From positions 144,909 to 208,908 of IMG/VR virus record IMGVR_UViG_3300043786_000977: DNA of 64,000 nucleotides; one strand, given 5' to 3'. Position 1 is the first letter of the stretch. Every line of letters begins with the position of its first letter. The translations under genes were made by a program, and so were the position numbers. This document shows positions 42,348 through 64,000 of the stretch, piece after piece. The notes under the pieces were generated by a model. That model had not been told where the DNA came from, did not search any database, and saw only the letters and a program-made list of their open reading frames with translations.

Positions 42348-42950
42348 ATGAGTCAAGCATTACCGACAGCAACACCTGAACAGATTCTGGAATTCAAGAA
42401 GGGTGCTGCTGCCCGTTACAAGGAACAAGGTATCAGTCCGGCTGATGCCACCCGTCTATTCGACGCACATATGTCGAAGCTGGCCAACGATCTCGGTTTA
42501 ACGAGTAAACCGTTGAGCCCCAAGGCACAGAAGATTGCTGCAGCGATGAAGACGATCATCAAGCAAGCAAAGCCTAAACATGACTTTACTCTTGCCGAGG
42601 TTGCACGGCAGCGGGCCAAGAAGGGCCCGTGGTGGAAGGTCCAGCGCGTTAAGGGTACAGATGTGAGTGATGAAGAACGCGCTTCAGCTGAGAAATCTCT
42701 CGCAGCCCAGAAGAAGGCTGAAGAAGCCAAGGATAAAGATAAGGATAAAGAAAAGAAACCTGGCCGCATTCGTTCAGCTGCTGTCGGAGCCGGGCGTGGC
42801 GCACTAGCAGGTGGAGCGAGCGGGGTTGCGTTATCCGCCCTCGCCGAACTTCTTCATAGCCGTCGGTATCCCCACGATCCTTTTGCCGGCGCTGGTATAG
42901 GTGCTGGAGCTGGTGGCCTCATAGGTAGCGTCATCGGCGCAAATAAGTAA
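42348..42950 (+). CDS. Glycine-zipper protein with shared N-terminal module
   Basis: C-terminal GxxxG-rich segment. Confidence 0.7.
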   Translation: MSQALPTATPEQILEFKKGAAARYKEQGISPADATRLFDAHMSKLANDLGLTSKPLSPKAQKIAAAMKTIIKQAKPKHDFTLAEVARQRAKKGPWWKVQRVKGTDVSDEERASAEKSLAAQKKAEEAKDKDKDKEKKPGRIRSAAVGAGRGALAGGASGVALSALAELLHSRRYPHDPFAGAGIGAGAGGLIGSVIGANK

Positions 42951-42994
42951 ATACTAATACACCGAAATACGAATAGTTGACACAGGAGTCAAGA

Positions 42995-43627
42995 ATGCGC
43001 ATTACCAATATATTACCGAATCCCCGTTACTTCTCTTACGCCAACACCGTAGGCACGACATTGAAGCCGGGTGAGACGTCGATTGAGTTACCGCTTACCG
43101 CCATTCATAACACGTCACTGTGGAAGGATATCGATGGCGGGTGTGTTAAGCTGACACTCAACGAGGCCGATAAGTTGTTCCTCAACAAGTTACTGCGTGT
43201 AACCGCGGCCGATGCTGTGCCTGAGGTTAAGACCAAAGCGGGTAAACAAACAACACGGCAACGGCGTCAACAACAGGCCAAGCTACAGCGTATAGCCCGT
43301 GAGGCTGAGGCAGCAGAGATAAGGAAGAAGGCGCCCAAGCTGATAAATCCGGGTGGGGCTACAGGGCAGCCTGTCTTCGGTAAAGATACACCGATTCCCG
43401 TTGTAGAGTTAGGCAAGGCCGAGTCACTTGAACAACTCAAGCGGCACAATCACGGTGTCGAACTTAAACGTGCAACGATACCCACCGGGGTACCCAGTAA
43501 TCCAGCAGGTTCGGCCGCAGGGCAACCTGTCTTCAGTCCCGGCCCTGGCCCGGGTACGGAGAACAAGGGTATAGGCAAGGCGATACCGACGACCGTTGAC
43601 AACATGAAGCGAGGCAAGCTGGTATGA
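42995..43627 (+). CDS. Hypothetical protein
   Basis: SD CAGGAG. Confidence 0.65.
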   Translation: MRITNILPNPRYFSYANTVGTTLKPGETSIELPLTAIHNTSLWKDIDGGCVKLTLNEADKLFLNKLLRVTAADAVPEVKTKAGKQTTRQRRQQQAKLQRIAREAEAAEIRKKAPKLINPGGATGQPVFGKDTPIPVVELGKAESLEQLKRHNHGVELKRATIPTGVPSNPAGSAAGQPVFSPGPGPGTENKGIGKAIPTTVDNMKRGKLV

Positions 43628-44448
43628 GAAAAAGAACCCCGTTAGGCACTAAACCGGGTGCTGTTTGGGGGTCCGAAAAGAGTGGGTATCGTCACGAGGT
43701 ACTCCCGGGAGAAGGACCACCCGACAGACTTACAATACCTGTAGCAGCAATAAGTGGACGACAGGCAGGACGTCTAACGCCGGCCGAACGGAAATACCAC
43801 GCAGGAGTATACGAAGTCGTAGATGCAAGAGAGGCAGCAGTACGTATGGCAGCTAGATCAAAAGGACAGTTGAGACCCATCAATGGTGGGCTGGATGACG
43901 CACAGGTACCCCTGACGCGTAAGCAGGCGCAGCCGCGGCAGGTGATAACCCAACCACAACCGATCATAGGGGACGATACAGAGGTCATTGAATCAAACGA
44001 ACTGGATGCCTTTGAGCCGGGTATGCAGCAGACTGCAGACCCGCGATCCGTGAAGGGCTGGGTGGAGGCGGTACCTGGTTTTGCACAACCACCGAGTCAT
44101 AGGGTGCAGTTACCCGGAACGTATTCCAATCTGGAGGCTCAGACACGGGCAGAACAAAGCATAGGTATACAGCAGAAGTACCTGGCCCAGCGGCGCCGTA
44201 TCATGCTTGAGTTGACGGATACGACACTCACTATGTCAGCGATCGACGTGATCGTTAACAAGTACAGCGTAACTGTGCTCTTGCCTCAACTCGCAGATGG
44301 TGGTACATTTATACCGCGCTGTGGATCCGAATTGACCATATCGATGGCAGACGAGTCCATCGGTTGTTACTTTCCCGGAGCCCACTTCGAGATCCCGCAG
44401 CTGAAACTAATCGGATTGACATTCATCCGTAAGGAAGAAGGTACATGA
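43624..44448 (+). CDS. Hypothetical protein
   Basis: Overlapping start/stop. Confidence 0.65.
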   Translation: MRKRTPLGTKPGAVWGSEKSGYRHEVLPGEGPPDRLTIPVAAISGRQAGRLTPAERKYHAGVYEVVDAREAAVRMAARSKGQLRPINGGLDDAQVPLTRKQAQPRQVITQPQPIIGDDTEVIESNELDAFEPGMQQTADPRSVKGWVEAVPGFAQPPSHRVQLPGTYSNLEAQTRAEQSIGIQQKYLAQRRRIMLELTDTTLTMSAIDVIVNKYSVTVLLPQLADGGTFIPRCGSELTISMADESIGCYFPGAHFEIPQLKLIGLTFIRKEEGT

Positions 44449-44583
44449 TAGACGCAGCCCTGATTCAGGATCTGGCACATGCCACAGGCTGTGCCAGAGT
44501 GCTATCTGCGGATGAGATTAAAACAATCCGGCAGAAGCTGGCCAATGCGTATGTAGATGACATTTTGGATAAGGAGGCACCCG

Positions 44584-44763: not shown

Positions 44764-44772
44764 GGAACATCT

Positions 44773-46719
44773 ATGGCGACCCAAAACGCAATGCGCGGTT
44801 TCTTTAACTGGGATGAGGCGAGTGGTATCACTAAGGCCGGCGCGGGCAAGTACCCGAATCCGTTCTGCGATATCGCAAGCGAATATATCCCCAAGGATAT
44901 CAAGGAAATCTTCGAGTGGTGCGAATACTTGATGTTAAGTGTCACGCCCTTCCGTACTGTATCCCAACGCGTGGTACGGTACTTCCTGACTGAATTGGTA
45001 CTGGAAGGCCAGTCCGATAACGAGCGTGAGCAGTACGAAGACTTCTTGAATGACCAGCTACATATCCTGCAGCAACTCGCTGAAATCGGCGACGATTATA
45101 TGTGCTACGGGCAATCATTCATCAGCATATACTTCCCCTTCGACCGGTTCCTTATCTGTCCCCAATGCAATACGACCTATCACGTCGCAACACTGCAGTA
45201 TAAGTTTGAGCGTACCAAGGGTACCTTTAAGGTACACTGTCCGCGGTGTGACGCACAGGTTGAGATGCGGCGTGAAGACAGGCGCAGTTCTGATACGTCC
45301 CGGGTTAAACTGATTCGCTGGAACCCTAAGGAAATACGCCTGCGCGTACATCCGATCAGCGGGCATATCGAGTACTACCTCAAGCTGGACAGCGAGTTCG
45401 TAAGCAAGATTCTGGACGGCGAGCCGTTCTATCTGAACGAAACACCGTGGGCGATCATTGACGCTTGTATCAAGAGCGATAAGTCCAAGAAGGAGTACCT
45501 GTTTAAGTTCAAGGATGATTCGATTTATCATCTACGGTGCAGCACCCTGGCCGGCTTACCCATCAAGGGTTGGGCCATCCCGCCTATTCTGCCCAACTTC
45601 AAACTGGCCTACTATGTGCAGTTACTACGCCGGTACGACGAGGCCATCGCCTTGGATTTCATTATACCGTTCCGTATTCTGTTCCCGAACAACACATCGC
45701 CCCAGGGGCAAGACGCATTGTCTGCGATCAGCATGTCATCCTTTATCGGACACATGCAGGGCATGATTAACGCCAAGCGCAAGAACCTGACGGATATACA
45801 GGTATCACCGTTCTCGATCGGTTACGAGATGTTGGGCGGCGAAGCGAAGACACTGGCACCCAAGGACAATATAGCCTTGGCTGTAGATGAACTGTTGAAC
45901 TCGTTGGGTTATCCGGCTGAGATGTATAAAGGTACCCTGGCCTTCCAGGCGTTCCCCGTTGCCTTGCGGCTATTCGAGAAGCAGTGGAACAGTTTGGTAG
46001 ATGGTTATGACGACTTTCTTTCGTGGTTATTGAAACGGTTATCACGTCACTTCATGTGGGGTGAGATAAAGGGATCGTTGCGCAGCGTTACCTTGGCTGA
46101 CGATATCGAACGTAAGGCCTTATCCTTGCAGGGTGCGGCCGGCGGCGATGTGTCCAAGCAGACGGCTTATCGGCCTATGGGCATCGATTACATGGAAGAA
46201 CAGAAGCGTGTGGTGGAGGAACAGGAAGCCATCCAGAAGTTGCAGCAGGAAGCCATGGCCCGTCAACAGGCCCAGGCTGGCCAGCCGCAGGGTGGGCAGG
46301 AGAGCGGTCCGTCGTACGGCGCGACACCCGGAGACGTACAGGAACAGGCCAAGGCTTTGGCCCAACAGCTGTTGCTACAGACACCAGAGACTATGCGTCG
46401 CGGTGAACTGATCAAGATCAAACACAGCAACCCCACGCTTCACGCGCTGGTGTTGCAGGCGATGGATGAGATGCGTAAAGAGATGGCGCGACAGGGTCAG
46501 GCCCAGATTATGGAACAGGCCAAGTCCGCGGAGATCATCGGTTTTGGTCCTGCGAATACGTTGCCGAGTCCTATTCGTATTGGTCTGCTTGTAGCTGACC
46601 AGTTAACCGAATTCGGACCACATGAACTACGTAAGATGGCTATGGACATTCGTGATAAGATACCCCATGCGGATGAGGCATTCCGTTATGTCTATCGGCG
46701 TATGATGGGTTGGGCATAA
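44773..46719 (+). CDS. Putative portal protein with Zn-ribbon insertion
   Basis: 648 aa; DYMCYGQSF (YGNAF-like), IRWNPKEI, IYHLR, helical stem segment; CPQC/CPRC insert. Confidence 0.6.
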   Translation: MATQNAMRGFFNWDEASGITKAGAGKYPNPFCDIASEYIPKDIKEIFEWCEYLMLSVTPFRTVSQRVVRYFLTELVLEGQSDNEREQYEDFLNDQLHILQQLAEIGDDYMCYGQSFISIYFPFDRFLICPQCNTTYHVATLQYKFERTKGTFKVHCPRCDAQVEMRREDRRSSDTSRVKLIRWNPKEIRLRVHPISGHIEYYLKLDSEFVSKILDGEPFYLNETPWAIIDACIKSDKSKKEYLFKFKDDSIYHLRCSTLAGLPIKGWAIPPILPNFKLAYYVQLLRRYDEAIALDFIIPFRILFPNNTSPQGQDALSAISMSSFIGHMQGMINAKRKNLTDIQVSPFSIGYEMLGGEAKTLAPKDNIALAVDELLNSLGYPAEMYKGTLAFQAFPVALRLFEKQWNSLVDGYDDFLSWLLKRLSRHFMWGEIKGSLRSVTLADDIERKALSLQGAAGGDVSKQTAYRPMGIDYMEEQKRVVEEQEAIQKLQQEAMARQQAQAGQPQGGQESGPSYGATPGDVQEQAKALAQQLLLQTPETMRRGELIKIKHSNPTLHALVLQAMDEMRKEMARQGQAQIMEQAKSAEIIGFGPANTLPSPIRIGLLVADQLTEFGPHELRKMAMDIRDKIPHADEAFRYVYRRMMGWA

Positions 46720-47513: not shown

Positions 47514-47515
47514 TC

Positions 47516-48166
47516 ATGACCCAATACAGTGGTTTGTTATACGCAATGGAACGACAGGAGAAACGCGCTTTCCTTGACGGTTATGAGGCGTGGCAGAACC
47601 GTAATCCCGTAGCTAGTACGGCAGCTTACTTTCTACCTTTCGGCGTGGGCTCGGCACTAAGCTTAGCCGATGCCGGTCGTTCATTCTCCAAGGGTAATAT
47701 AATGGGCGGCATCGGTAACACGCTGTTGGCCGGTGCCTCCTTCATCCCGGGCGGCGGGATCCTCGGTCAGGGCATTGTGAGAGGCGGTAAAGCAATAGCC
47801 AGGTTGCTGAGACTCGGGAAAGCCGGCGGCCGGCTCAGCAGAGTGGCTGCGGCGGGTAGTCGAGTTGCGCCTAAGATTATAAATGCAAACAACCGTATGG
47901 CAGGATTTACGGCACCGATACGTGGTTGGAAACCGACGACAGCTGCTGTAGGCTTGACTGTAGGTGGTGGTATGATGGAGGCGGGGCAGGGTGGTGGTAC
48001 TCCGTATGGGCCAGGCAATTATCACGGGCCTAATCTCAATGCTCGTATGGCAGAACCCTTCGACGAGGCAGGATTCTTCACACCACGCAGTGGGCCACCG
48101 ATGTTCCGGGGCCTAGCCGCGTTCAATCCAGGTGCAAACAGGAATACGTTACCATTTGGCGGATAA
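47516..48166 (+). CDS. Gly/Ala-rich putative virion-internal protein
   Basis: EKRA motif, glycine zipper. Confidence 0.6.
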   Translation: MTQYSGLLYAMERQEKRAFLDGYEAWQNRNPVASTAAYFLPFGVGSALSLADAGRSFSKGNIMGGIGNTLLAGASFIPGGGILGQGIVRGGKAIARLLRLGKAGGRLSRVAAAGSRVAPKIINANNRMAGFTAPIRGWKPTTAAVGLTVGGGMMEAGQGGGTPYGPGNYHGPNLNARMAEPFDEAGFFTPRSGPPMFRGLAAFNPGANRNTLPFGG

Positions 48167-48170
48167 ACCC

Positions 48171-48563
48171 ATGTTGTTACCTTCTGACATAGCTGGGCTG
48201 TTTAAACGGGCATCGGACTACGATACCAGTTTCAGTGGTGGTTCTCGTAGTCCCGGACTTCCTACGTTGGCAGACCTGGTACAGGCTGTGCGCCAGGACC
48301 GCGGTTTAACACCCGGGGAACAGGCACAGTTGCTTAGTCAGGTCCGTTCATTGGTGGGCAATGCGTCAGCGAATACCGATCTAGCTGCACTAGTTCATAA
48401 GGGACTGGGTGCCGGTTTGGGTTATCTGGTTGGTAAATACTTCGGAATGGGGATGATGGGTCGGTTGGTGTCTGCGGCTGCCGGTTTCGGCCTCGGACGT
48501 GTTCTGTATAACAAACTGAATGAACCGCCGAACCCGTATAGGGGATACAAGATCCTAGGTTGA
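48171..48563 (+). CDS. Glycine-zipper protein
   Basis: GLGAGLGYLVGKYFGMG. Confidence 0.6.
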   Translation: MLLPSDIAGLFKRASDYDTSFSGGSRSPGLPTLADLVQAVRQDRGLTPGEQAQLLSQVRSLVGNASANTDLAALVHKGLGAGLGYLVGKYFGMGMMGRLVSAAAGFGLGRVLYNKLNEPPNPYRGYKILG

Positions 48564-48582
48564 ACAATGAAAGGGTTGAACA

Positions 48583-48885: not shown

Positions 48886-48921
48886 CGTTTACGGGAATGG
48901 TACAAACACAAGGAGAAGGCG

Positions 48922-49353: not shown

Positions 49354-49364
49354 GGGGATAGTTT

Positions 49365-49721
49365 ATGGCGACACAATACAGAGAAGTACTGGAGCCTCAG
49401 GAGCGCCTTGCCGCATTTCGGCTTGGCGCTTGTCTGAAGTTTGCTTCAATTGGTGTGCGTCCGTCTGAGATCGACGCCTTCGTCAAACAGGCCGGCCCGG
49501 GTGCGACATCTGCATTGTTTTCGCCGACGGGTGCAGCTAAGATGGTTGCGACTGTAGCGATACTCACGGGAGTACCGCTTGGTGTTGCAGCACATGTGAT
49601 TGGTAAGCGTATCACGGGTGCACGCGGTCGGGAGAAGGAACTGCAAAGTCAGATTGGATACTATCGTAATGCATCACAGCAACTCGAGACCGGGTTGGCG
49701 GGTGCACAAACATCGATGTAA
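49365..49721 (+). CDS. Protein with shared N-terminal module
   Basis: AFRLGACLKFASIGVRP..KQAG. Confidence 0.65.
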   Translation: MATQYREVLEPQERLAAFRLGACLKFASIGVRPSEIDAFVKQAGPGATSALFSPTGAAKMVATVAILTGVPLGVAAHVIGKRITGARGREKELQSQIGYYRNASQQLETGLAGAQTSM

Positions 49722-49730
49722 GGATTCAAT

Positions 49731-50099: not shown

Positions 50100-50100
50100 T

Positions 50101-51573: not shown

Positions 51574-52047
51574 ATGCGTGATCGTACAATACAGTATAGC
51601 CGTGTAACGGAGATCGTAACCAAGTGGGCGCAACAGGCAGAAGAACAACCTCTGCATGCTGACGAGAAGTTGCGGCGTAAGGAGCGTGTACGGCGCATAC
51701 TCGGTACCATGTTGGGCGCGGGTTACGGTACACTGGCAGGTGGTTTCGTCGGGGGTCAGGTGTTGGGCCGCGGTCCCGGGTTCGACCGGCAACGGGCTGT
51801 TAAAGGCATGCTGCTTGGCCTGATCGGTGGTGGTAGTCTTGGTTATGCAGGCGGCGCCGCTGTGAATAAGATTCAGCGCTATACAGGGGATCATAGACCA
51901 CAGCCTCAATCACAGACCATTCAGATCATCGTGCCGCCGGATAGCAATATCGTACAACGGGCGGCAGATGCAATGGATGATGGACAGGGGTCCAAGACAG
52001 CGGCAGTGTTAAGAAAACGTTTTAGGAGGTTCCTAAGTAGCGTATGA
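51574..52047 (+). CDS. Glycine-zipper protein
   Basis: GTMLGAGYGTLAGGFVGG. Confidence 0.65.
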   Translation: MRDRTIQYSRVTEIVTKWAQQAEEQPLHADEKLRRKERVRRILGTMLGAGYGTLAGGFVGGQVLGRGPGFDRQRAVKGMLLGLIGGGSLGYAGGAAVNKIQRYTGDHRPQPQSQTIQIIVPPDSNIVQRAADAMDDGQGSKTAAVLRKRFRRFLSSV

Positions 52048-52092: not shown

Positions 52093-52386
52093 ATGATGAC
52101 CAACCTCCTCTTGTTAACAATCGTATTCGGGGTAGCCTGGATCGATTGGTTCATTTATGGCAAGAAGGGCGACGCTCTGATAGATCGATCCCCTTGGCTC
52201 ATATTTTGGGCATGCGGGGAGGCTTCATTGGGCGTAGTAGCGGGCTTTGTGGTATGGGACGCTTACCAGTCACGGGAATGGTTTAGGATAGTCGGCGTAC
52301 TCGGAGCGACAGTTGTCGGCTGCGCGTTAGGTATAATCACCAGTAGGGTAATCGATTGGAAGAAATGGAGGATGCGACATGGATAA
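52093..52386 (+). CDS. Small multi-TM membrane protein (holin-like candidate)
   Basis: Three hydrophobic segments, basic C-terminus KKWRMR. Confidence 0.5.
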   Translation: MMTNLLLLTIVFGVAWIDWFIYGKKGDALIDRSPWLIFWACGEASLGVVAGFVVWDAYQSREWFRIVGVLGATVVGCALGIITSRVIDWKKWRMRHG

Positions 52387-53310: not shown

Positions 53311-54192
53311 ATGAATCCCTTACTTCTACGTTATCTAAAGTTGCTCAGTGGTTCAGGTATACGTACCTCGAAGGCCACGGGTGCGCCTATTGGTAAAGAG
53401 GTAGCGAAGACAGTTGGTACACAGTTGGGTACGGCTGGTGCTATTGCAGGTCTAGGTTACGGTGGGAAGAAAGTGGTAGAACATTATCCCGAACTCAAGG
53501 ATATGTTGGACAACGTATTTCACAAGAGTCGCATCGGCCGCGTGATGGACGGACTCGGTATAAAGACGAGTCAATATCAATATCAAGATCCGGACACACA
53601 ATTACGGACGTCGTTGTTGAGTTTGCTCGCCGGTGGTGTACCTGCTGGATTAGGTCAGTTTGCGCACGAGACGTTACCGGACTTGAAGCCACGTGAGCGT
53701 ATTGCCAAGCGTATACTTGCGCTATCACAGAAGCACCACAAAGGTGTTATAGAGGGCAGTCAGTACGCCTTCGATTCAAATACACGTAAGATTCACTCAC
53801 CAGATGGTCTCAAAGGTAATGTCGGAGCTATTGCTCATGAGGCAGGACATGCGATGGATCCGGTACTCAAGCGTACTGGACGTCTTCACAATATATTGCG
53901 CGGTGCTGGAGGTTTCGCAGGTAGTTGGGGTGCGATGGCAGCTTCTGATCGTGATACAGCACGGAACTACGCACTTGGCGGCAGTGCGCTTGCCTTACCC
54001 ACTTTAGCGCACGAGACCTATGCAGGAATCAAAGGTATGCAGTTGTTACGTCAGACATCACGGAAGATACCAACCAAGGTTTTGCTACGTGCCATGAGCG
54101 GACTACCATCTTATGCAGGTGCAGCCCTAGCACCTTTGGCAGTTTACGGCACCCGGTCAGCATTGGGAGGCTTCGGAGATAAAAATGATTAG
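53311..54192 (+). CDS. Putative Zn-metallopeptidase (HExxH) with glycine zippers
   Basis: AIAHEAGHA plus downstream LAHE. Confidence 0.6.
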   Translation: MNPLLLRYLKLLSGSGIRTSKATGAPIGKEVAKTVGTQLGTAGAIAGLGYGGKKVVEHYPELKDMLDNVFHKSRIGRVMDGLGIKTSQYQYQDPDTQLRTSLLSLLAGGVPAGLGQFAHETLPDLKPRERIAKRILALSQKHHKGVIEGSQYAFDSNTRKIHSPDGLKGNVGAIAHEAGHAMDPVLKRTGRLHNILRGAGGFAGSWGAMAASDRDTARNYALGGSALALPTLAHETYAGIKGMQLLRQTSRKIPTKVLLRAMSGLPSYAGAALAPLAVYGTRSALGGFGDKND

Positions 54193-57100
54193 TACACCAC
54201 CGGCATCGCCATTACCATCACACTTGCGGGATTTCGACGATACCGACAAGGCACGGGAACTGATTTATTCCGGTGCCCTGGATGCGGTATCGAAACGTTT
54301 TCCTGTCGAAGATGACGAGTATCGCGTTGAGTTACACAAACCACGATATACCGGGGTTCAGACCTATTCGCTGGAGCAACAGAAGCAGGCGCTGATGAAG
54401 GAGCGTCGTCTGACTACACCGATCACGGGTACCTGGAAACTGGTGCACAAGCCCACGGGTGCTGTGCTGGATGAGCGTGAGGATGTCGTGATGAATGTGC
54501 CCTATTACACGCAGCGGGGTACTTTCATTCACGGCGGTAACGAGTACAGTGTTGTGAACCAGGCACGCTTGCGTCCTGGCGTGTACATTCGGCGCCAACG
54601 TACGGGTGAGATAGAAGGCCACGTCAACGTCAAGTCGGGTTCGGGTAAACCATTCCGCGTGCAGCTGGAACCCAACACTGGTGTGTTCAAGTTACACGTG
54701 GGGCAGTCCAACGTACCGCTTTATCCGTTAATGCGTGCCGTAGGTGTCACGGATCAGCAACTGATCAAGGCGTGGGGTGCTGACCTTGTGGCAGCCAATA
54801 TCAAGAAGCAGGATCCGCGGTCAATCGCGAAGTTGTATGATCGCTTCGCCGGTTATAAAGCTGAACCTGGTATAGATGAAGCGGGTCAGACAAAGTATCT
54901 TCGAGATTCATTACCGTTATTTGAGTTGGACGAGGATGTCAACGCACGTACGCTCGGTCTTACAGGAGCTAAGGGTGTAACGCCTGATGTACTCCTGCGT
55001 ATGACTTCGAAGATGTTGGGTGTATCGCGTGGCGAAGAGGATCCGGATGATCGTGACTCTCCACAGTTCAGTCATATCTACGGCGTGGAAGATCTCATAC
55101 GTGAACGTATTGATAAGGATGCGGGTAAGCTGACACAGAGTATGCTGCGCAAGGTACGGCGTTCGCGTAATCTCCAGGCTGTGCGCCGTGGTGCCTTGAA
55201 CTCTTATCTCGATAGCCTGTTGTTAGGCTCAGGGCTGGCAATGCCTTTGGAGGAAACGAACCCGTTGCATACACTTGAGCAGCTGAATCGTATCACCAAA
55301 CTCGGTGAAGGCGGTATTGGATCGGCTGAGGCCATTACAGATGAGGCCCGTGACGTTAACTCAGGGCAGTTCGGTTTTGTGGATCCGATCACTGGACCAG
55401 AGGGTTGCCAAGCTTCTTCAATGCAAGTACTTACGTATGATGGTTGGGTATCGTGGCCGAACGTAACTATGGATATGCGTTTGGCATGCAACATTGACGG
55501 TCAATTGGAATACCATAAGCCTACTGAATTACATGCGTTTGATCACGATGGTTGGATCTATGAGGCCCGTACTAAGCACCTAGCGTTCAGTGTAACAGGT
55601 GATCATAAGATTTGGAATCGTGCGTACGATCCGGGATCCGCGTATCGCTGGGAGCGTGTAGGTGCGTCATTTGAGCGTGATCGGCATATCTGTATAGGCG
55701 GACATTCGCCCGTGTCTGGTTGCGATACTGACTTCGAACTTCCGATTGTCGAGGGTGGTCATGCGCTTAAACTTACGACGACAACCATCCCTATGTTACT
55801 GTGGGCCGAATTCATGGGGTGGTTTCTAAGCGAGGGTAGCACCTGTGTTAGATCCGACGGACAGATTCAGGTCAGTATCGCGCAACACGATCCGGAGAAC
55901 CAGGAGCGGATACGTCGTGTTTTGACACAACTTCCATTTGAGTTTTCGGAGAATCGAGTTCATGGTGAGTTGCACGCTTTTATAATTGTGCGTAAACAGC
56001 TTGGAGTGTATCTGCAACAGTTCGGTCGTTCTGCAGACAAGTATATTCCACAGTATTTGCTTGATGCCAGTATTGAAGCCCGTAAGGTGTTGTTGTCGTC
56101 TTTGTGCGCGGGCGACGGGCGGCGTAAAGGTTCTACGTACACATATTGCACGACAAGTCATCGACTTGCACTTGATGTTGAGCGTCTTGCGTTTTCGTTG
56201 GGTTACTCCGTACGTGTACGTTTCGAGAAGGACGATCGACCCCAGGCATTACAGGGCGGCACGTGGTGCGTGCATTTGCATCTCACCAAGGAACGCTGTG
56301 TCCTAAAACGTCATATGTCTCGTCGTCCTTACACTGGAAAGGTTTACTGCGCCACGGTACCCGGTAGTCAACTGTATGTACGTTTGGGTGACTACGGTGG
56401 GCACTGGTCCGGGAACATGAACATCGGTATTGACGTGCGTGCAGCCTATCGTACGTTCAAGGGTAACGATAACAACATGTACGCCGAGTTCAACGACATA
56501 GGTACGGGGAAGCCCGTTTATCTGCGCCCTGACGAAGCCGCGTCACGTGTCGTGGCATTTCCCGGGCAAGACCCCAAGGCGGCTACGATATACGCTATGC
56601 GTCGTGGGAAGGTTGAACGTGTACCGCGGGCGGAAGTTGACCTCGCTGTACCTTCGTTCGCACACATGATGTCCAGTCATACCAATCTCAATCCGATGCC
56701 GACAGCTGTACAAGCCGGTCGTCAGTTCTACGGTGCCAAGTTCTGGAGCCAGTACATGCCACAAGTGGCAGGTGAGGTACCTCTTGTTGACTCGCTCATG
56801 CCTGATGGCAAGACGACGTGGACTGAGCACTACGGGCGCAAGGTGGGTACGTTAAAGAGTGACGTGGGTGGTACGGTCGTTAAGGTGACTGATAAGGGTG
56901 TGACCGTCATGGATGCCGATGGTAAAAAGCATCTGAACGAGTTGGTGAAGGACTTCCCGTTTAATCGGTTGACAGGTATCAGTTACTTCCCGACTGTAAA
57001 AGTAGGTGACCAAGTCAATGTTGGTGATATGGTTGCCCACTCTAATTTCACGGACTCTAAAACAGGGGCGTTGAATCTTGGCCGCAATTTGCGTACAGCC

Positions 57101-59584
57101 ATCATCCCGTACAGGGGACACTCGTATGAGGATGCTTACGTGATCTCCAAGACCGCGGCTGATAAGCTGGCTTCGGAGCGTTTACAGGGCTTCGATCTGG
57201 ATGCACGCCACGGTGTCGAGATGGGACGTAACAAGTACATCTCTGCATTCCCGCGTGCGTATACGACGGAGCAGATAGATAATCTGGATGATGATGGCGT
57301 GGTTAAACCCGGTACTGTGTTGAAAAAGGGTGACCCGATCGCTTTAGCCGTAGGCCCGCGTCTACTTACAAGCGCCGACGCCCAGTTAGGTAAACTGCAT
57401 AAGGTATTACGAAGTGCCTATACCGATAAGTCATTGACATGGGATTACTCAGGCCCGGGCACAGTTACGGATGTCGCACTGACACGGAACGGTGTTCGTG
57501 TGAATATAAAGAGCACACCGCCTGTAAGCCAAGGTGATAAACTGTCGACACGCTTCGGACTGAAAGGTGTTGTTGGTACCATTTTGGATGACGATAAGAT
57601 GCCCAGGGATCCAGTAACCAATCAGCCCTATGAACTGTTACTGAATCCGATGGCCGTACTCTCACGCGTGGCGCCGAACCAGATCATGGAAATGGCGCTC
57701 GGTAAGATCGCAGCTAAGACAGGCAAGCAGGTTCGTATACCCCAGGAGCCACCACCAGAGGGTTGGATGAACTGGGTACAGGCGCAACTCGACGAAGCAG
57801 GTATAAAGGATTCTGCGGATATCTTTGATCCGGAGAGCGGTAAGACGATCCGTAACATCGGTGACGGTAGCGTATACGTGTCCGCCTTCCATCACTTGGC
57901 CGAGAAGAAGTTATCGAGCCGCGGTGACATCGGCAGTTATTCAGCTGACGAACAGCCAGCCCGCGGTGGTAGTACCGGGGCAAAGAAGTTTTCACAGATG
58001 GACGTTAACGCGGCCCTGGCTCACGGGGCGACAGATGTCATCAAGGACGTGATCACCATTCGTGGTACCAAGAACGAGGAGTTCTGGAAGGCCCTTAAAC
58101 TTGGCCGGCCGCTACCTGAACCCAAGGTGCCGTTCATATACGACAAGTTCCTGAATACCTTACGTGCCGGTGGGATCAACGTTGTAGAGAAAGGCGACAT
58201 GACACAGTTGTTGCCTATGATGGACGACGACGTTAAACAGTTGTCGAAGGGTGTTGTGACCAGTAGTGATATGGTTGATTCTGATTTTGAACCGATGGCT
58301 GGTGGTCTCTTCGATGTCGGACGTACAGGTGGTATGGCAGGTAACCGGTGGACACATATCGAGTTGCCTGAACCACTCCCTAACCCCGTAATGGAAGAAC
58401 CGATCCGTCGTTTGCTCGGGCTCAAGATACAGGATATGGAAGATATCGTGGCTGGGCGTAAGGAGTTGAATGGTCAAACGGGTGGCGGTGCGTTAAAGGC
58501 TGCACTTGAGAAGATAGACCTGGATGCCATGATCACAGAGCACAGGCAGAAGGTACGGGTACTGCGTGGTGCTAATCGCGATAACTCGGTAAAGGTGTTG
58601 GGCTATCTTGCCTCTGCCAAGGAGCAAGGTATTCATCCCGCGAAATGGATCATCAGCAAGGTACCTGTATTGCCACCTGTCTTCCGTCCTATTTCGCGTA
58701 TGGGTGACGTAGCCTTGTCTGCAGACTTGAATGAGCTATACCGTGACGTGTTGGAGAGTTCTAAGACATTCAAGGAACTCAAACCAGATCTGCCAGATTC
58801 CGAGTTGGCAGATGAACGCTTGAACATATACAACTCTGTGCGTGCGGCATACGGCTTCGGCGATTCGATTACACCTGAGGGTCGATCGAAGCATCTTAAG
58901 GGCGCCGTACGTCAAGTCATCGGTACGTCTCCGAAGTTCGGGTTGTTCCAGTCCAAGGTTATATCAAAGCCGGTTGATGTTGTGGGACGTGGTGTGGTTA
59001 TACCCAACCCCAACCTGGATATGGATCAGCTCGGTATTCCTGCCGATTCGGCGTGGACATTGTACAAGGACTTCGTGATGCGCGCCCTCGTTCGCCACGG
59101 GTACCCGGCGATACGTGCAGCCGAAATGCTTGAGAACCGAACACCGGAAGCCAAGGAGATGCTGGAGAAGGAAATGTCAACACGGCCGGTGATTATGGAT
59201 CGGGCACCGACGTGGCATAAATTCAACCTGTTGGCGTTCTACCCGCATATCGTTGAGGGTCATACGCTCCAGGTCAGCCCATTGGTGACCAAGGGTTTCA
59301 ATATGGACTTCGACGGAGACCAGGCCAACTTCCATGTACCGGTCTCAGATAAAGCCGTCAGCCAAGCGACACGTAAGATGCTACCGTCAGCAAATCTATT
59401 CAGCTTAACGGATCTACAGTCGGTCCGGCATGCACCGTCAATGGAGATGACATACGGACTGTACCAACTTACACGGGAACAAACGAAGAAACCGACACGT
59501 GTATTTAAGACAGCAAAGGAAGCAAGGGCAGCATATAAAGCGGGAGAAATCGCCGCGAACGATCCAATTGAAATACTTGCCTGA
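54185..59584 (+). CDS. Phage multisubunit RNA polymerase: beta fused to the N-terminal half of beta', intein-containing
   Basis: Beta motifs QRGTFI..NQARLRPGVY, PEG..NIG, YEDAYVIS, GDKLSTRFGLKG, LNP..VLSR, HH..KKLSSR; beta' motifs HIELP, VPVLPPVFRP, DLNELY, KPVD..GRGV, RAPT, catalytic NMDFDGD. Confidence 0.93.
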   Translation: MISTPPASPLPSHLRDFDDTDKARELIYSGALDAVSKRFPVEDDEYRVELHKPRYTGVQTYSLEQQKQALMKERRLTTPITGTWKLVHKPTGAVLDEREDVVMNVPYYTQRGTFIHGGNEYSVVNQARLRPGVYIRRQRTGEIEGHVNVKSGSGKPFRVQLEPNTGVFKLHVGQSNVPLYPLMRAVGVTDQQLIKAWGADLVAANIKKQDPRSIAKLYDRFAGYKAEPGIDEAGQTKYLRDSLPLFELDEDVNARTLGLTGAKGVTPDVLLRMTSKMLGVSRGEEDPDDRDSPQFSHIYGVEDLIRERIDKDAGKLTQSMLRKVRRSRNLQAVRRGALNSYLDSLLLGSGLAMPLEETNPLHTLEQLNRITKLGEGGIGSAEAITDEARDVNSGQFGFVDPITGPEGCQASSMQVLTYDGWVSWPNVTMDMRLACNIDGQLEYHKPTELHAFDHDGWIYEARTKHLAFSVTGDHKIWNRAYDPGSAYRWERVGASFERDRHICIGGHSPVSGCDTDFELPIVEGGHALKLTTTTIPMLLWAEFMGWFLSEGSTCVRSDGQIQVSIAQHDPENQERIRRVLTQLPFEFSENRVHGELHAFIIVRKQLGVYLQQFGRSADKYIPQYLLDASIEARKVLLSSLCAGDGRRKGSTYTYCTTSHRLALDVERLAFSLGYSVRVRFEKDDRPQALQGGTWCVHLHLTKERCVLKRHMSRRPYTGKVYCATVPGSQLYVRLGDYGGHWSGNMNIGIDVRAAYRTFKGNDNNMYAEFNDIGTGKPVYLRPDEAASRVVAFPGQDPKAATIYAMRRGKVERVPRAEVDLAVPSFAHMMSSHTNLNPMPTAVQAGRQFYGAKFWSQYMPQVAGEVPLVDSLMPDGKTTWTEHYGRKVGTLKSDVGGTVVKVTDKGVTVMDADGKKHLNELVKDFPFNRLTGISYFPTVKVGDQVNVGDMVAHSNFTDSKTGALNLGRNLRTAIIPYRGHSYEDAYVISKTAADKLASERLQGFDLDARHGVEMGRNKYISAFPRAYTTEQIDNLDDDGVVKPGTVLKKGDPIALAVGPRLLTSADAQLGKLHKVLRSAYTDKSLTWDYSGPGTVTDVALTRNGVRVNIKSTPPVSQGDKLSTRFGLKGVVGTILDDDKMPRDPVTNQPYELLLNPMAVLSRVAPNQIMEMALGKIAAKTGKQVRIPQEPPPEGWMNWVQAQLDEAGIKDSADIFDPESGKTIRNIGDGSVYVSAFHHLAEKKLSSRGDIGSYSADEQPARGGSTGAKKFSQMDVNAALAHGATDVIKDVITIRGTKNEEFWKALKLGRPLPEPKVPFIYDKFLNTLRAGGINVVEKGDMTQLLPMMDDDVKQLSKGVVTSSDMVDSDFEPMAGGLFDVGRTGGMAGNRWTHIELPEPLPNPVMEEPIRRLLGLKIQDMEDIVAGRKELNGQTGGGALKAALEKIDLDAMITEHRQKVRVLRGANRDNSVKVLGYLASAKEQGIHPAKWIISKVPVLPPVFRPISRMGDVALSADLNELYRDVLESSKTFKELKPDLPDSELADERLNIYNSVRAAYGFGDSITPEGRSKHLKGAVRQVIGTSPKFGLFQSKVISKPVDVVGRGVVIPNPNLDMDQLGIPADSAWTLYKDFVMRALVRHGYPAIRAAEMLENRTPEAKEMLEKEMSTRPVIMDRAPTWHKFNLLAFYPHIVEGHTLQVSPLVTKGFNMDFDGDQANFHVPVSDKAVSQATRKMLPSANLFSLTDLQSVRHAPSMEMTYGLYQLTREQTKKPTRVFKTAKEARAAYKAGEIAANDPIEILA
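55406..56416 (+). mobile_element. Intein (337 aa) with LAGLIDADG homing endonuclease in RNAP beta
   Basis: Starts CQASSMQVLTYDGW; blocks FMGWFLSEGS and LCAGDG; ends VYCATVP...WSGN; interrupts PEG|xNIG. Confidence 0.9.
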
Positions 59585-59592
59585 GGTTAGTC

Positions 59593-59656: not shown

Positions 59657-60145
59657 ATGGTTAAACTAGATCGTGCATTGTTAGCAGAAGTCAAGCGGGC
59701 CTTCGTCCCACAACCTGGTGGCGGTGGTGAACCGGTTGCTGGAGCGAGTCAGATGACCGCAGGAATGGGTGCTCCGATGGGCGCGCCCCCGGGCGGTGAT
59801 CCAGCGGCTGCGGGCGGTGCTATGCCTGCTCCTATGCCTCCCGCGGGCCTCGATCCTGCAATGGCGGGAATGATGGGCGGTGGCGGGGCAGCACCGGATC
59901 AGGGAATGACAGGATCATCACAGTTGAACCTCACTGTTGACGACCTGATCAAGTTGTTCAAGGTCTTCCAGCGGAACTCGGGTGGTGGCGGGGCGCCAGC
60001 AGCGGCACCAGCCGCAGCGCCGGCAGCAGCAGCTCCGCAAGGTGGTGACCCGCGTATTGATCGTCTTGTGACTATACTGGAACAGGCGCTCGGACAAGGT
60101 GGCGGAGGTGGCGGGGGCAGTGAGTTTGACAGCCAGCAGGCGTAA
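59657..60145 (+). CDS. Low-complexity Gly/Ala/Pro/Met-rich protein
   Basis: EVKRAF then GAPM/APAAAP repeats. Confidence 0.7.
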   Translation: MVKLDRALLAEVKRAFVPQPGGGGEPVAGASQMTAGMGAPMGAPPGGDPAAAGGAMPAPMPPAGLDPAMAGMMGGGGAAPDQGMTGSSQLNLTVDDLIKLFKVFQRNSGGGGAPAAAPAAAPAAAAPQGGDPRIDRLVTILEQALGQGGGGGGGSEFDSQQA

Positions 60146-60158
60146 GGCAGATTAACCT

Positions 60159-60440: not shown

Positions 60441-60442
60441 CA

Positions 60443-60940: not shown

Positions 60941-60966
60941 TCCTCACATTCTCAGGTTAATATATA

Positions 60967-62814: not shown

Positions 62815-62923
62815 GGTGATTATGGATAAACAAGCATATTGGTGAGACAAAACGTCACATCATCATTGCATTGTATATGCCGAGTGTGATATAGATAGAG
62901 TATTCGGAGCTAAGGAGTAAGAT

Positions 62924-63199
62924 ATGACAGCACAAGAACAGGCGTACCAAGCAGGTTTTCAACAGAAGTGCGCCGAGCGCGGCGTGGATCCAGTCGCTTT
63001 GATCAAGTGGGCACAGGCAGTGGCTCCAGATCCCGATACTACTCTCGACGGCAAACGCCCGCTCAACCCGCGCTTACCTGATAACGTGATGTTCCGGAAT
63101 CCTCCGGTTAAAGGGACCAATGTACTGGGACGTACAGTCGCGCCGACGGCCACAAAGAAAGCACCGCAGCTTGCACCTAAATTACCAGTACGGAAGTAA
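62924..63199 (+). CDS. Small protein with shared N-terminal module
   Basis: QAYQAGFQQKCAERGVDP..IKWA. Confidence 0.7.
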   Translation: MTAQEQAYQAGFQQKCAERGVDPVALIKWAQAVAPDPDTTLDGKRPLNPRLPDNVMFRNPPVKGTNVLGRTVAPTATKKAPQLAPKLPVRK

Positions 63200-63211
63200 G
63201 GAGACAGAGAT

Positions 63212-64000
63212 ATGACAAAGACTTTCAATTCATTGTTGGCGCAGGTACCAAAGAGCCTGGAGCCTTTTGGTTACGTCAAGCAGGCAGGGCCTGGGGGCGT
63301 CGAGAGCCCTGACGAGAACCAACTAGAACAGGACTTCTCACGGTTGGCGTATATGTTCGTACAGGATCGTGCGTCGCCATTGATGAAGTATATGCTGGGC
63401 TTCGAGGTCGTTAACCGTGAGGAAGACGGCTCAAGAGCGGTAGGTCTGTTTGGCTTCAAGATCGGCAAGGACTATTACTATGTCCCGGCCTTCTTCGTGA
63501 ACAACCAGATCAAGGGTGTGGATCTTCTATTCTCCAAGCGCACGAACATGTTCGTACCTCTCCAGGAAGACTGGATCAATTATATCGTCAATCGCCAGAC
63601 GATCGAACTCGGCGGACAGGCCGAGGATAAGGTACAACGTGACTTTGAGAATCCGAACTTCGATTTCTTATCACGGCCACCTATCGGACCGAAGACGGCC
63701 GAAGCACCCTGGTCGTTCAAGGAAGCATGGTACCAGCTCCAGATGCAGTTAAATGAAAAACTGGAGAAGGATGCCGCGTTCCAGGAGGCCTGGGGCGGTC
63801 TCGTATGCAGCATAATGAACAAGGACCTACCGTTTGAAAAGACAGGCGAAGCGAGCCCGTTGAAGACGTGGCTCGAAAAGCGCGGCGGACCTAAGGCAGT
63901 AAGTACGTTCCTGAATACGTTAACCAGGAATCCCAAGTACGCCAACGCCGCCCTTACATTTTACCCATCAGTCGAGTCCCTGTACGTGCATCAGTTCGCG
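63212..64000 (+). CDS. Large hypothetical (putative virion) protein, truncated by the window end
   Basis: SD AAGGAG; open frame of 263 codons to the window end, MTKTFNSLL...YVKQAG. Confidence 0.75.
   Translation, partial: MTKTFNSLLAQVPKSLEPFGYVKQAGPGGVESPDENQLEQDFSRLAYMFVQDRASPLMKYMLGFEVVNREEDGSRAVGLFGFKIGKDYYYVPAFFVNNQIKGVDLLFSKRTNMFVPLQEDWINYIVNRQTIELGGQAEDKVQRDFENPNFDFLSRPPIGPKTAEAPWSFKEAWYQLQMQLNEKLEKDAAFQEAWGGLVCSIMNKDLPFEKTGEASPLKTWLEKRGGPKAVSTFLNTLTRNPKYANAALTFYPSVESLYVHQFA

What the first reader, a model, noticed from the sequence alone, without database searches (positions are those of the whole stretch)
42348..64000. Family of Gly-zipper proteins sharing an N-terminal module ending in K-x-A: candidate capsid-targeting and protease-processing signal
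Seen: EFKKGAAARYKEQGISP..SKLA (42348), AYIEGFIKTCADKGVDP..AKLA (48922), AFRLGACLKFASIGVRP..VKQA (49365), QAYIRGVLTKYAEQKQA (52379) and QAYQAGFQQKCAERGVDP..IKWA (62924). K-x-A (KQAG, KRAF, KVAS, KEAG, KTAA) also recurs in 47516, 48171, 50101, 51574, 59657 and 63212, usually just before Gly-rich hydrophobic helices. Known: T4 internal proteins carry a cleaved capsid-targeting peptide, and phiKZ-type head proteases cut many internal proteins at a short motif. Inference: a K-x-A-processed set of internal or ejection proteins that release membrane-active peptides.
Basis: partly seen in the sequence, partly recalled or inferred. Interest (0 to 1): 0.65.

Follow-up and report, generated by a model that had tools for sequence, protein, structure and literature searches.

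The report
Shared leader and K-x-A head-protease motif
In an uncultured ~209-kb phage, several small glycine-rich head-region proteins start with the same 33-residue helical leader ending in Lys-x-Ala, a motif marking most head proteins of this phage group and probably the cutting signal of its capsid-maturation protease.

Summary
The shared leader (AYxxGFxxKCAExGVDPExLVKxA) is certain for 48922 and 62924, probable for 49365, and unproven for 42348 and 52379. Another copy lies just past the window end, at genome 1695-2360.

The leader defines an unannotated family: 165 clusters among 1.84 billion proteins, with no Pfam or PHROG match. All eight genomic contexts I examined lie in the portal / virion-RNA-polymerase / head-gene block of one phage clade.

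- It is the most over-represented of all 400 gapped dipeptides in head-block proteins of five genomes (z 4.5-6.7).
- It is not enriched in RNAP, portal, tail or replication genes.
- It is the most positionally conserved dipeptide between distant orthologues.

I identified the head protease at genome 5828-7249. Its fold matches T4 gp21 (Z 10.1) and herpesvirus assemblins. Invariant K-x-A sites sit in the disordered segments on both sides of its catalytic domain. The capsid protein also carries K-x-A near residue 26.

Best reading: K-x-A is the prohead-protease site, closer to assemblin's x-x-A|S than to phiKZ's A-x-E, and the leader is a T4-CTS-like propeptide. Cleavage, packaging and membrane activity are all untested.

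The parts
42348..42950 (+). 200-aa protein with two C-terminal Gly-zipper segments (res 143-166, 176-200). Its N-terminus only weakly resembles the leader. K-L-A at res 44-46 and four more K-x-A sites.
   Evidence: (hhalign probability 18%); Pfam Gly-zipper_YMGG E 0.096, below cut-off
44773..46719 (+). Portal protein. Marks the start of the head / virion-RNAP block.
   Evidence: 27-30% identity to the annotated portal of Salmonella phage Arash and to Vibrio phages D181/D148/D69
47516..48166 (+). 216-aa Gly-zipper protein with K-R-A at res 16-18.
   Evidence: (the L009 orthologue has K-V-A at the aligned place)
48171..48563 (+). 130-aa Gly/Ala-rich hydrophobic protein with K-R-A at res 12-14.
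   Evidence: K-R-A conserved in L009
48922..49353 (+). 143-aa protein: leader module (res ~9-37, ending K-L-A at 35-37, nt 49024-49032), acidic/Pro linker, then two Gly-zipper segments.
   Evidence: (E 5e-18 against the family profile)
49365..49721 (+). 118-aa protein: diverged leader (K-F-A at res 25, K-Q-A at res 41-43, nt 49485-49493) followed by one hydrophobic helix.
   Evidence: hhalign probability 90%, E 2e-6; both K-x-A sites invariant in three orthologues down to 25% leader identity
50101..51573 (+). 490-aa protein with Gly-zipper or hydrophobic segments. Eight K-x-A sites, four of them conserved in variable linkers just upstream of the hydrophobic helices.
51574..52047 (+). 157-aa Gly-zipper protein with K-W-A at res 17-19 and K-T-A at res 141.
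52379..53308 (+). 309-aa Gly-zipper protein. Its N-terminus has only the first helix of the leader, then K-Q-A (res 18-20).
   Evidence: (leave-one-out E 0.29)
53311..54192 (+). 293-aa Gly-rich protein with no K-x-A at all.
54185..59584 (+). Multisubunit RNA polymerase beta fused to the N-terminal part of beta', interrupted by a LAGLIDADG intein-like insert (about nt 55436-56425). K-x-A is not enriched.
   Evidence: Pfam Rpb2_2/3/6, Rpb1_1/2, LAGLIDADG_3; the insert is absent from homologues; K.A z 0.8
59657..60145 (+). 162-aa Gly/Ala/Pro/Met-rich protein with K-R-A at res 13-15.
   Evidence: K-Q-A at the aligned place in L015
60967..62814 (+). RNA polymerase beta', C-terminal part.
   Evidence: Pfam Rpb1_5; homologous to Arash gp216
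62924..63199 (+). 91-aa protein with the canonical leader (res 1-33; helices 3-18 and 23-33; K-W-A at res 28-30, nt 63005-63013). No Gly-zipper.
   Evidence: AF2 pLDDT 92-96 over res 1-30; E 8e-19
63212..64000 (+). First 263 aa of a 782-aa head protein that runs on to genome 1-1687. Homologue of Arash gp218. K-Q-A at res 23-25 closes a short variable N-terminal peptide.
   Evidence: an N-terminal K-x-A lies at or within a few alignment columns of this place in four orthologues

Best explanation
Window 42.3-64 kb is the portal / virion-RNA-polymerase / head-assembly block of a complete, circularly assembled 208.9-kb uncultured phage. It is distantly related to Salmonella phage Arash. The block continues for about 12 kb past the window end into the genome start.

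The phage's prohead protease lies at genome 5828-7249. It has an N-terminal catalytic domain with the T4-gp21 / herpes-assemblin fold, a linker, and a C-terminal helical domain. I infer that it recognises Lys-x-Ala, preceded by a hydrophobic or beta-branched residue and followed by Ser, Ala, Gly or Gln. By analogy with assemblin's x-x-A|S, I infer that it cuts after the Ala.

Under this model the protease would:
- free itself at K34-x-A36 and K219-x-A221;
- trim about 28 residues from the capsid protein;
- remove short N-terminal peptides from many head-block proteins.

A subset of the small proteins (48922, 62924, probably 49365, and genome 1695-2360) carries a dedicated 33-residue helix-turn-helix leader whose second helix ends in this K-x-A. 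I infer that the leader acts like T4's capsid-targeting sequence: it takes variable cargo, often Gly-zipper helices, into the assembling prohead and is then clipped off. The hydrophobic cargo would stay inside the head to leave with the DNA and the packaged RNA polymerase.

Shown: the module family and its restriction to this gene block; the enrichment and positional conservation of K-x-A; the protease fold and the placement of its invariant K-x-A sites.

Inferred: cleavage itself and its exact bond; targeting; packaging; any membrane activity.
For: 1. K.A ranks first of 400 gapped dipeptides, by observed against composition-expected counts, in head-block proteins of five genomes:
- G000: 56 against 29.7
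- Arash gp218-224: 37 against 17.9
- D181: 51 against 24.8
- L016: 64 against 30.2
- L015: 58 against 24.4.

2. It is not enriched in the controls:
- RNAP and portal, z below 1;
- the rest of the G000 proteome, 181 against 202;
- non-head genes of Arash and D181, and L016 tail genes, 1 against 5.2.
R.A, K.S and K.G are not enriched. Codon usage at the sites is ordinary, so the constraint acts on the protein.

3. 40 of 70 K.A sites keep their place between G000 and orthologues of 20-64% identity. This is rank 1 of 36 dipeptides; R.A keeps 25%.

4. Protease:
- AF2 model, pLDDT 85. Residues 48-210 match T4 gp21 (5jbl_B; Z 10.1, rmsd 3.1 A, 128 aa), then about 20 herpesvirus protease entries at Z 5.1-7.3.
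- In 67 homologues, K34 and A36 are invariant and K219/A221 are 99-100% conserved. Both sites lie at the edge of or inside segments with pLDDT below 50 that flank the catalytic domain.
- These proteins carry 14.3 K-x-A on average, against 3.5 expected.

5. The capsid protein has K-x-A in the first 55 residues in 120 of 120 homologues, 88% in the same column. D181 (29% identity) and L016 have it too.

6. 20 of 36 head-block proteins have K-x-A at residues 8-50, against 25 of 184 elsewhere in the genome (odds ratio 8, p 2e-7).

7. Module:
- 165 clusters at E<=1e-3.
- 123 of 150 are N-terminal, and 78% end in K-x-A.
- All eight contexts lie in the same portal/RNAP/head block: L008, L009, L011, L013, L016, L017, L018 and the contig of P0039.
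- Copy number and position vary, as in a paralogous leader family.
- Multi-module proteins look like repeated leader-cargo units. In P0018, modules 2 and 3 are also preceded by GEK-x-AS.

8. In Arash, the Gly-zipper proteins gp213, gp221, gp224 and gp4, and the homologues gp218, gp220, gp222 and gp223, were all detected in purified virions by MS (PMC10585845).
Against: - There are no proteomic or biochemical data for any K-x-A site.
- In the AF2 model of the module, K28-W29-A30 lies inside helix 2 (res 23-33) at high confidence. It could therefore be conserved purely for packing.
- Several conserved K-x-A sites of the protease family lie inside folded parts (K78, K330). Not every site can be a cleavage site.
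- The Arash MS reports 100% coverage for gp221, gp223 and gp224. It also lists 116 'virion' proteins including many enzymes, so it neither shows loss of propeptides nor cleanly defines the virion.
- Arash and D181 lack the module. The leader is therefore not required for K-x-A function or for Gly-zipper proteins to be present.
- 53311 is Gly-rich but has no K-x-A.
- The complex prediction of protease with leader could not be run.
Confidence: 0.5

Rival explanations
1. K-x-A is a structural or binding motif that is not cleaved. The 'L-V-K-x-A' helix end would be a recurring contact element by which head-interior proteins (scaffold, protease tail, leader proteins) bind each other or the inner capsid surface. 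The leader is then a small folded assembly or docking domain that stays attached to its cargo.
For: - K-x-A of the module lies within a confidently predicted helix.
- Many K-x-A sites of the scaffold-like proteins of Arash and D181 sit in repeated helical units such as '..ELVKEAS..' and 'LEKAAAV'.
- Some conserved sites lie inside folded domains of the protease.
- The Arash MS gives 100% coverage of gp221 and gp223.
Against: - The invariant sites flanking the protease domain and the one in the capsid protein's N-terminal arm lie in disordered or variable segments, where only K and A are kept.
- There is a preference for a small or polar residue right after the Ala: S is 4-fold enriched in Arash and D181, A in G000, and Q/A/G in the module.
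- The protease-linker-helical-domain layout mirrors herpes pUL26 with its release site (PMC4498786).
Confidence: 0.27
2. The leader and Gly-zipper proteins are not virion components. They would be membrane proteins made late in infection (lysis control, superinfection exclusion, an envelope anchor for assembly), or small accessory factors of the phage RNA polymerase that happen to be encoded in the same late block.
For: - Gly-zipper and single-pass hydrophobic helices are typical of membrane proteins.
- A lipoprotein-signal ORF (48583) sits inside the block.
- Several module genes directly flank RNAP genes (62924; L011 16174; P0013).
- No homologue has a tested function.
Against: - Module genes also sit between pure head genes: genome 1695, and P0007 between the g2364 and g3344 homologues.
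- They share the head-specific K-x-A signature and its N-terminal placement.
- Gly-zipper proteins of Arash were detected in virions.
Confidence: 0.15
3. Chance or composition: Ala- and Lys-rich low-complexity proteins produce K-x-A often, and the 'module' is a loose resemblance among short helices.
For: - In the Gly-zipper set alone the excess is modest (z 3.1, rank 7 of 400), and that set was chosen partly for having K-x-A.
- Two of the five quoted modules are not statistically supported.
Against: - All expectations were computed per protein from its own composition.
- K.A ranks first of 400 in five genomes, with clean negative controls.
- Site positions are conserved.
- The module finds 165 clusters at E<=1e-3 in 1.84 billion proteins, ten of them at E<=1e-10.
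Confidence: 0.03

Closest known systems
T4 capsid-targeting sequence (CTS) of the internal proteins IPI-III, removed by the prohead protease gp21 (Mullaney & Black 1996, as cited in PMC10052503)
   Same: Several unrelated or variable cargo proteins of one phage share a short N-terminal leader. The leader ends at the head protease's recognition motif. The genes lie in or near the head block. The protease has the same fold (T4 gp21, Z 10.1).
   Different: The leader here is about 33 residues and predicted to fold as a helical hairpin, whereas the T4 CTS is about 10-19 residues. It can be internal or tandem. The motif is K-x-A rather than [LI]-x-E, which is not enriched. Targeting and cleavage are untested. 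There is no sequence similarity.
phiKZ / SPN3US head maturation: protease gp175 / gp245 cutting many head and ejection proteins after A/S/G-x-E (PMC10052503, PMC5694885)
   Same: A large phage with a virion-packaged multisubunit RNAP. One short motif recurs in many head proteins. There are N-terminal propeptides of 20 or more residues, self-processing of the protease, and multiple motifs within propeptides.
   Different: The motif differs (K-x-A); [AGS]-x-E is at expectation here (106 against 104). No homology was detected for portal, capsid or protease at the sequence level (PHROGs and Pfam blank). No shared helical leader has been described for phiKZ-type proteins.
Herpesvirus assemblin (pUL26 / UL80a): Ser-His-His protease fused to a scaffold, cutting at release and maturation sites ending in Ala (PrV YLQA-T and VQA-S; PMC4498786)
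   Same: The fold matches (Z 5.1-7.3 to about 20 entries). The layout is a protease domain, then a linker carrying the site, then a C-terminal helical assembly domain. The inferred P1 is Ala with a small P1' residue, and specificity is carried at P3/P4.
   Different: Lys at the inferred P3 instead of a hydrophobic residue or Gln. [VLI]-x-A is not enriched here. This is a bacterial virus. The catalytic residues are only inferred from invariance (H98, H127, S149 and others).
Glycine-zipper families (Pfam Gly-zipper_YMGG, Gly-zipper_Omp, Rick_17kDa_Anti)
   Same: GxxxG-type Gly/Ala-rich hydrophobic helices. The ESM-Atlas neighbours of 48922 include a YMGG-bearing cluster and a 'glycine zipper family protein'.
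   Different: No window protein reaches a Pfam threshold; the best is 42348, E 0.096, 12.9 bits against a cut-off of 28.9. Those families are bacterial envelope proteins with signal peptides, and none has this leader.

Membership tests
T4-type capsid-targeting leader with protease-removed propeptide | Several otherwise unrelated proteins of one phage share a conserved N-terminal leader | tested here: met
   48922, 62924 and genome 1695 are clear and 49365 is probable. The C-terminal parts are unrelated. The same holds family-wide: 123 of 150 are N-terminal with diverse tails.
T4-type capsid-targeting leader with protease-removed propeptide | The leader ends at the recognition motif of the phage's own prohead protease | tested here: inconclusive
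   78% of modules end in K-x-A. The same motif flanks the protease domain and marks the capsid protein and other head proteins. That this is the protease's site is inferred, not shown.
T4-type capsid-targeting leader with protease-removed propeptide | The leader is necessary and sufficient to package cargo into proheads; mature cargo is found in virions | not testable with these tools
   Indirect only: Gly-zipper proteins of Arash, which lack the module, were detected in virion MS.
Prohead protease of the T4 gp21 / herpesvirus assemblin fold (for genome 5828-7249) | Assemblin-like fold of the catalytic domain | tested here: met
   5jbl_B: Z 10.1, rmsd 3.1 A, 128 of 164 residues; Foldseek probability 0.95. 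Herpes proteases: Z 5.1-7.3. Model pLDDT 85.
Prohead protease of the T4 gp21 / herpesvirus assemblin fold (for genome 5828-7249) | Conserved Ser and His catalytic residues | tested here: inconclusive
   S149, H57, H85, H98, H127 and H177 are invariant in 67 homologues. I did not superpose them on the gp21 or assemblin triad.
Prohead protease of the T4 gp21 / herpesvirus assemblin fold (for genome 5828-7249) | Gene placed with the scaffold and major capsid genes | tested here: met
   Gene order: protease, Ala/Glu-rich scaffold-like 411-aa protein, 118-aa protein, decoration-like protein, capsid protein. The order matches Arash gp222-gp226 and D181 0277-0282.
phiKZ/SPN3US-type or T4-type cleavage motif | [AGS]-x-E or [LI]-x-E recurring in head proteins | tested here: not met
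   106 against 104 expected, and 54 against 52.6 expected, in 31 head-block proteins.
Pfam Gly-zipper_YMGG (PF13441) | Score at or above the gathering threshold | tested here: not met
   Best is 42348, 12.9 bits against 28.9. The others gave no hit.
Any curated family for the leader module | Match in Pfam-A or PHROGs | tested here: not met
   No hit at E<=0.1 (48922, 49365) or E<=0.01 (62924, genome 1695) in Pfam, and none in PHROGs. Cluster members are named only 'hypothetical protein'.

The most novel reading that the evidence does not exclude
The 33-residue hairpin is a portable capsid-targeting domain of an abundant, uncultured clade of ~200-kb phages that encode a multisubunit RNA polymerase (found in virions of the cultured relative Arash). 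Their gp21/assemblin-fold protease has evolved a herpesvirus-like 'cut after Ala' specificity keyed by Lys at P3. The released Gly-zipper peptides are ejected and assemble a membrane conduit through which DNA and the packaged polymerase enter the cell.
Probability: 0.25. Interest if true: 0.8.

Novelty: new variant of a known kind. Interest (0 to 1): 0.62.

Why it matters
**A directly testable prediction.** The work predicts a new prohead-protease specificity, with K at P3 and A at P1. Cultured relatives are at hand (Salmonella phage Arash, Vibrio phages D181/D148/D69), and their existing virion MS data could be re-searched.

**Unannotated genes get a role.**
- The protease is unannotated in the clade. 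Arash gp222 is listed only as 'structural protein'.
- About 165 clusters of 'hypothetical' small proteins gain a candidate role.

**A link between phage and herpesvirus maturation.** If the Ala-P1 cut is real, it ties phage and herpesvirus capsid maturation together at the level of substrate choice, not only of fold.

**A possible packaging tag.** A folded, portable packaging leader would be a useful tool for loading proteins into large phage heads, as the T4 CTS has been.

**Virion RNA polymerase delivery.** It would also begin to address how phages that carry their own multisubunit RNA polymerase in the virion deliver it into the cell.

Tried and rejected
- **Pfam, PHROGs.** Scans of all block proteins gave nothing useful for the small proteins, protease, scaffold or capsid.
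- **PDB sequence search with the protease.** Only azurin noise at E>=0.006. The fold search was needed.
- **P0006.** The top hit of the module search is a bacterial chromosomal repeat protein. It matches 12 profile positions eight times over, so I rejected it as a false positive.
- **Module in Arash and D181.** None at E<=1. One weak look-alike in Arash gp220 (E 3.8) was not pursued.
- **Relatives by portal in IMG/VR.** Only two short contigs.
- **DNA-level explanation of K-x-A.** Rejected: Lys and Ala codon usage at the sites equals the genes' overall usage.
- **phiKZ, T4 and generic assemblin motifs; R.A, K.S, K.G.** None is enriched.
- **Arash supplement.** It holds gene and protein tables only, with no peptide lists, so termini could not be read.
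- **ESM Atlas look-alikes of 48922.** Only unnamed viral clusters and Gly-zipper leads below 0.9.
- **Scaffold-repeat idea.** I considered that the second half of the module is homologous to the scaffold repeats of Arash and D181 ('G-[VI]-x-F-x-E-A-V-E-L-V-K-E-A-S'). I noted the resemblance but did not test it with profiles.

Full report
**Where the window lies.** The window is the last 64 kb of a 208,908-bp IMG/VR viral record. Its two ends overlap by 127 bp, which indicates a circular assembly. Almost all genes are on the + strand.

From 42.3 kb onward the order is: small proteins, portal (44773-46719), about 7.5 kb of small and mostly Gly-rich proteins, an RNA polymerase beta/beta' fusion with a LAGLIDADG intein-like insert (54185-59584), three small genes, the beta' C-terminal part (60967-62814), the 91-aa protein 62924, and a head protein that runs off the window end.

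Beyond the junction, at genome 1-12,000 (locus L010), come the rest of that head protein, more head genes, a scaffold-like Ala/Glu-rich protein, a decoration-like protein and the major capsid protein.

The only named relatives are Salmonella phage Arash and Vibrio phages D181/D148/D69, at 27-39% identity for portal, RNAP, capsid and four head proteins. They keep the same gene order.

In Arash the RNAP beta subunit gave the most spectra in the virion preparation (PMC10585845). The RNAP encoded here is therefore plausibly packaged in the virion.

The clade is abundant in metagenomes: there are 734 homologues of one head gene, many on contigs of about 200 kb. It probably belongs to the RNAP-encoding Caudovirales lineage of PMC7481178. 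I did not test that.

**The module.** All five quoted strings are present. I built a profile from them and tested it leave-one-out against every ORF of the genome.
- It recovers 62924 (E 5e-6) and 48922 (E 5e-4).
- It does not recover 49365, 52379 or 42348.
- In four of the five leave-one-out runs it finds a further copy at genome 1695-2360 at E 0.001-0.02.

An exhaustive HMM search of 1.84 billion representative proteins with a 10-sequence module alignment found 165 clusters at E<=1e-3. The top hit is a bacterial repeat protein and a false positive. The rest are short proteins, median 162 aa.
- In 123 of 150 the module starts within the first 15 residues.
- 30 have two to five copies.
- The consensus is AYxEGFxxKCAExGVDPExLxKxA.

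AF2 on a 98-sequence alignment gives two helices (3-18 and 23-33) joined by the G-V-D-P turn. pLDDT is 92-96 up to residue 30 and disordered after that.

Against this deeper profile, 49365 is a probable diverged member (hhalign probability 90%, E 2e-6). 42348 is not supported (probability 18%). 52379 has only helix 1.

No Pfam or PHROG family matches, and the cluster members looked up (ten of the hits) are named 'hypothetical protein' or have no name.

The module is not always N-terminal. In P0003, P0004 and P0017 it follows a DUF3008 domain.

**Genomic context of the module.** Every context I could read is the same gene block of the same clade.
- L009 and L018 are syntenic with 47022-51574.
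- L011 has a two-module protein between the 50101 homologue and RNAP beta, and another module protein between split RNAP genes.
- L013 and the contig of P0039 have a module protein where genome 1695 sits. L013 has a second one between two head genes.
- L016 has three module proteins in a row at that place.
- L008 has one right after the portal.
- L017 has a three-module protein next to the RNAP.

Number and position vary between genomes, and one relative (L015) has none at the genome-1695 position. Arash and D181 have none at all.

43% of module proteins of 80 aa or more carry a Gly-zipper-like segment, against 3.5% of this genome's other proteins.

**K-x-A.** Within the Gly-zipper set the excess is modest: 41 against 26.7 expected from each protein's own composition, rank 7 of 400 gapped dipeptides. 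That set was partly chosen for having the motif.

The unbiased test is the rest of the head block. In 17 non-Gly head-block proteins, K.A is the most over-represented of all 400 X.Y pairs (56 against 29.7, z 4.8). The same holds in four other genomes:
- Arash gp218-224: 37 against 17.9
- D181 0273-0285: 51 against 24.8
- L016: 64 against 30.2
- L015: 58 against 24.4.

The controls are flat or depleted:
- RNAP and portal, z below 1;
- the remaining G000 proteome, 181 against 202;
- non-head genes of Arash (19 against 26.4) and D181 (18 against 19.6);
- L016 tail genes, 1 against 5.2.

The spacing is specific: K-A, K-xxx-A and K-xxxx-A pairs are at or below expectation in all three sets. K-xx-A shows a weaker excess (z 2.6) in G000 only. 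R.A, K.S and K.G are not enriched. Codon usage at the sites is ordinary.

In Arash and D181 the motif extends to G-[LMI]-[EV]-K-x-A-[SA].

Sites keep their place. 40 of 70 are conserved within two alignment columns between G000 and orthologues of 20-64% identity. This is the best of 36 dipeptides; R.A keeps 25%.

In 50101, four sites are conserved in otherwise variable linkers just upstream of the hydrophobic helices. In 63212, an N-terminal K-x-A is kept at or near the aligned place in four orthologues.

20 of 36 head-block proteins have K-x-A at residues 8-50, against 25 of 184 elsewhere in the genome (p 2e-7).

**The protease.** The 473-aa protein at genome 5828-7249 is the homologue of Arash gp222, which is annotated only as 'structural protein'. 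It sits directly upstream of the scaffold-like gene.

With a 67-sequence alignment AF2 gives pLDDT 85. The model has four parts:
- residues 1-34, disordered;
- a beta-rich domain at about 48-210;
- a disordered linker at 215-226;
- a helical C-terminal domain.

The beta-rich domain matches the T4 prohead protease gp21 (Z 10.1, rmsd 3.1 A, 128 aligned residues; Foldseek probability 0.95). It then matches pseudorabies, HSV, HCMV, KSHV and EBV proteases (Z 5.1-7.3).

S149 and several His residues are invariant.

K34 and A36 are invariant and lie at the edge of the disordered N-terminus. K219 and A221 are 99-100% conserved and lie in the inter-domain linker. Family members carry 14.3 K-x-A on average, against 3.5 expected.

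This layout is that of herpesvirus pUL26. There the protease frees itself from a C-terminal scaffold part at a release site ending in Ala (PrV YLQA-T; the maturation site is VQA-S; PMC4498786).

The capsid protein has K-x-A in its first 55 residues in 120 of 120 homologues, 88% in one column at about residue 26. The distant D181 and L016 proteins have it too.

**Interpretation.** The simplest account is that K-x-A is this clade's prohead-protease site. The leader would then be a propeptide that ends in that site.

This makes the leader proteins formally analogous to T4's internal proteins with their capsid-targeting sequence. It makes the whole system analogous to phiKZ/SPN3US, where gp245 cuts many head and ejection proteins after A-x-E and removes N-terminal propeptides of 20-254 residues (PMC10052503).

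The phiKZ and T4 motifs themselves are not enriched here.

Multi-module proteins then read as strings of leader-cargo units. In P0018 the second and third modules are additionally preceded by GEK-x-AS.

Weak support for virion residence comes from Arash. The Gly-zipper proteins gp4, gp213, gp221 and gp224, and the homologues gp218, gp220, gp222 and gp223, were all detected in purified particles. That study lists 116 'virion' proteins, however.

**Caveats.**
- Nothing here shows a cut.
- The module's K-x-A lies inside helix 2, so it may be conserved for packing.
- Some conserved sites lie inside folded domains.
- 100% MS coverage of several Arash homologues does not show loss of propeptides.
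- The protease-leader complex prediction could not be run.
- The bond cut (after Ala) is an analogy with assemblin.
- The membrane-active role of the Gly-zipper cargo is a guess from composition.

**Verdict.** The K-x-A processing idea gains strong indirect support and a named protease. The capsid-targeting and ejection parts remain inference. I file it as a new variant of a known kind: leader-plus-protease head maturation.

Noticed in passing
window 54185-59584 (insert about 55436-56425): The RNAP beta and beta' N-terminal parts are fused in one 1,799-aa ORF. It is interrupted by an insert of about 330 aa with a LAGLIDADG_3 match (intein-like). The insert is absent from the Arash, D181 and L018 homologues. 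In L011 the same polymerase is split into separate genes, with three genes between them, one a leader protein.
   Followed up: partly
L007 723-872 + 1992-3791; L008 385-732 + 1750-3396: The portal genes of two close relatives match the window's portal in two pieces about 1.0-1.1 kb apart. This suggests an insertion (intron, intein or homing element) in the portal gene.
   Followed up: no
window 48583-48885: A 100-aa ORF with a lipoprotein-type signal (MKAFVLLLLVMAAGC) sits in the middle of the Gly-zipper block. It is conserved in relative L018.
   Followed up: no
L013 1744-2790: A relative encodes a protein with a Volactin (PF25216, actin-like) match two genes upstream of RNAP beta'.
   Followed up: no
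P0003, P0004, P0017 (homologues of window 48922): In some relatives a DUF3008 domain (PF11450, E 3e-6) is fused in front of the leader module. The leader is then internal.
   Followed up: partly
L017 6878-8290 (P0018): A 470-aa protein with three leader modules also has a collagen-like G-x-y repeat. Modules 2 and 3 are preceded by GEKEAS and GEKAAS.
   Followed up: partly
L010 10528-10965 and 5175-5834 (genome start, outside the window): Two more Gly-zipper proteins lie among the head genes. The first has a leader-like start (WLNGFNKAAEAMGLTPEQ..) that is not detected by the profiles. The second sits in the position of Arash gp221, immediately upstream of the protease.
   Followed up: partly
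L005 (Arash gp223), L006 (D181_0278): The scaffold-like proteins of the cultured relatives consist of repeated units of the type G-[VI]-x-F-x-E-A-V-E-L-V-K-E-A-S and L-E-K-A-A-A-V. These resemble the second half of the leader module. Possible common origin; not tested.
   Followed up: no
window 40259-41689 (- strand): A 476-aa ORF lies on the minus strand in a locally GC-richer stretch (0.58), overlapping several + strand ORFs. I did not examine it.
   Followed up: no
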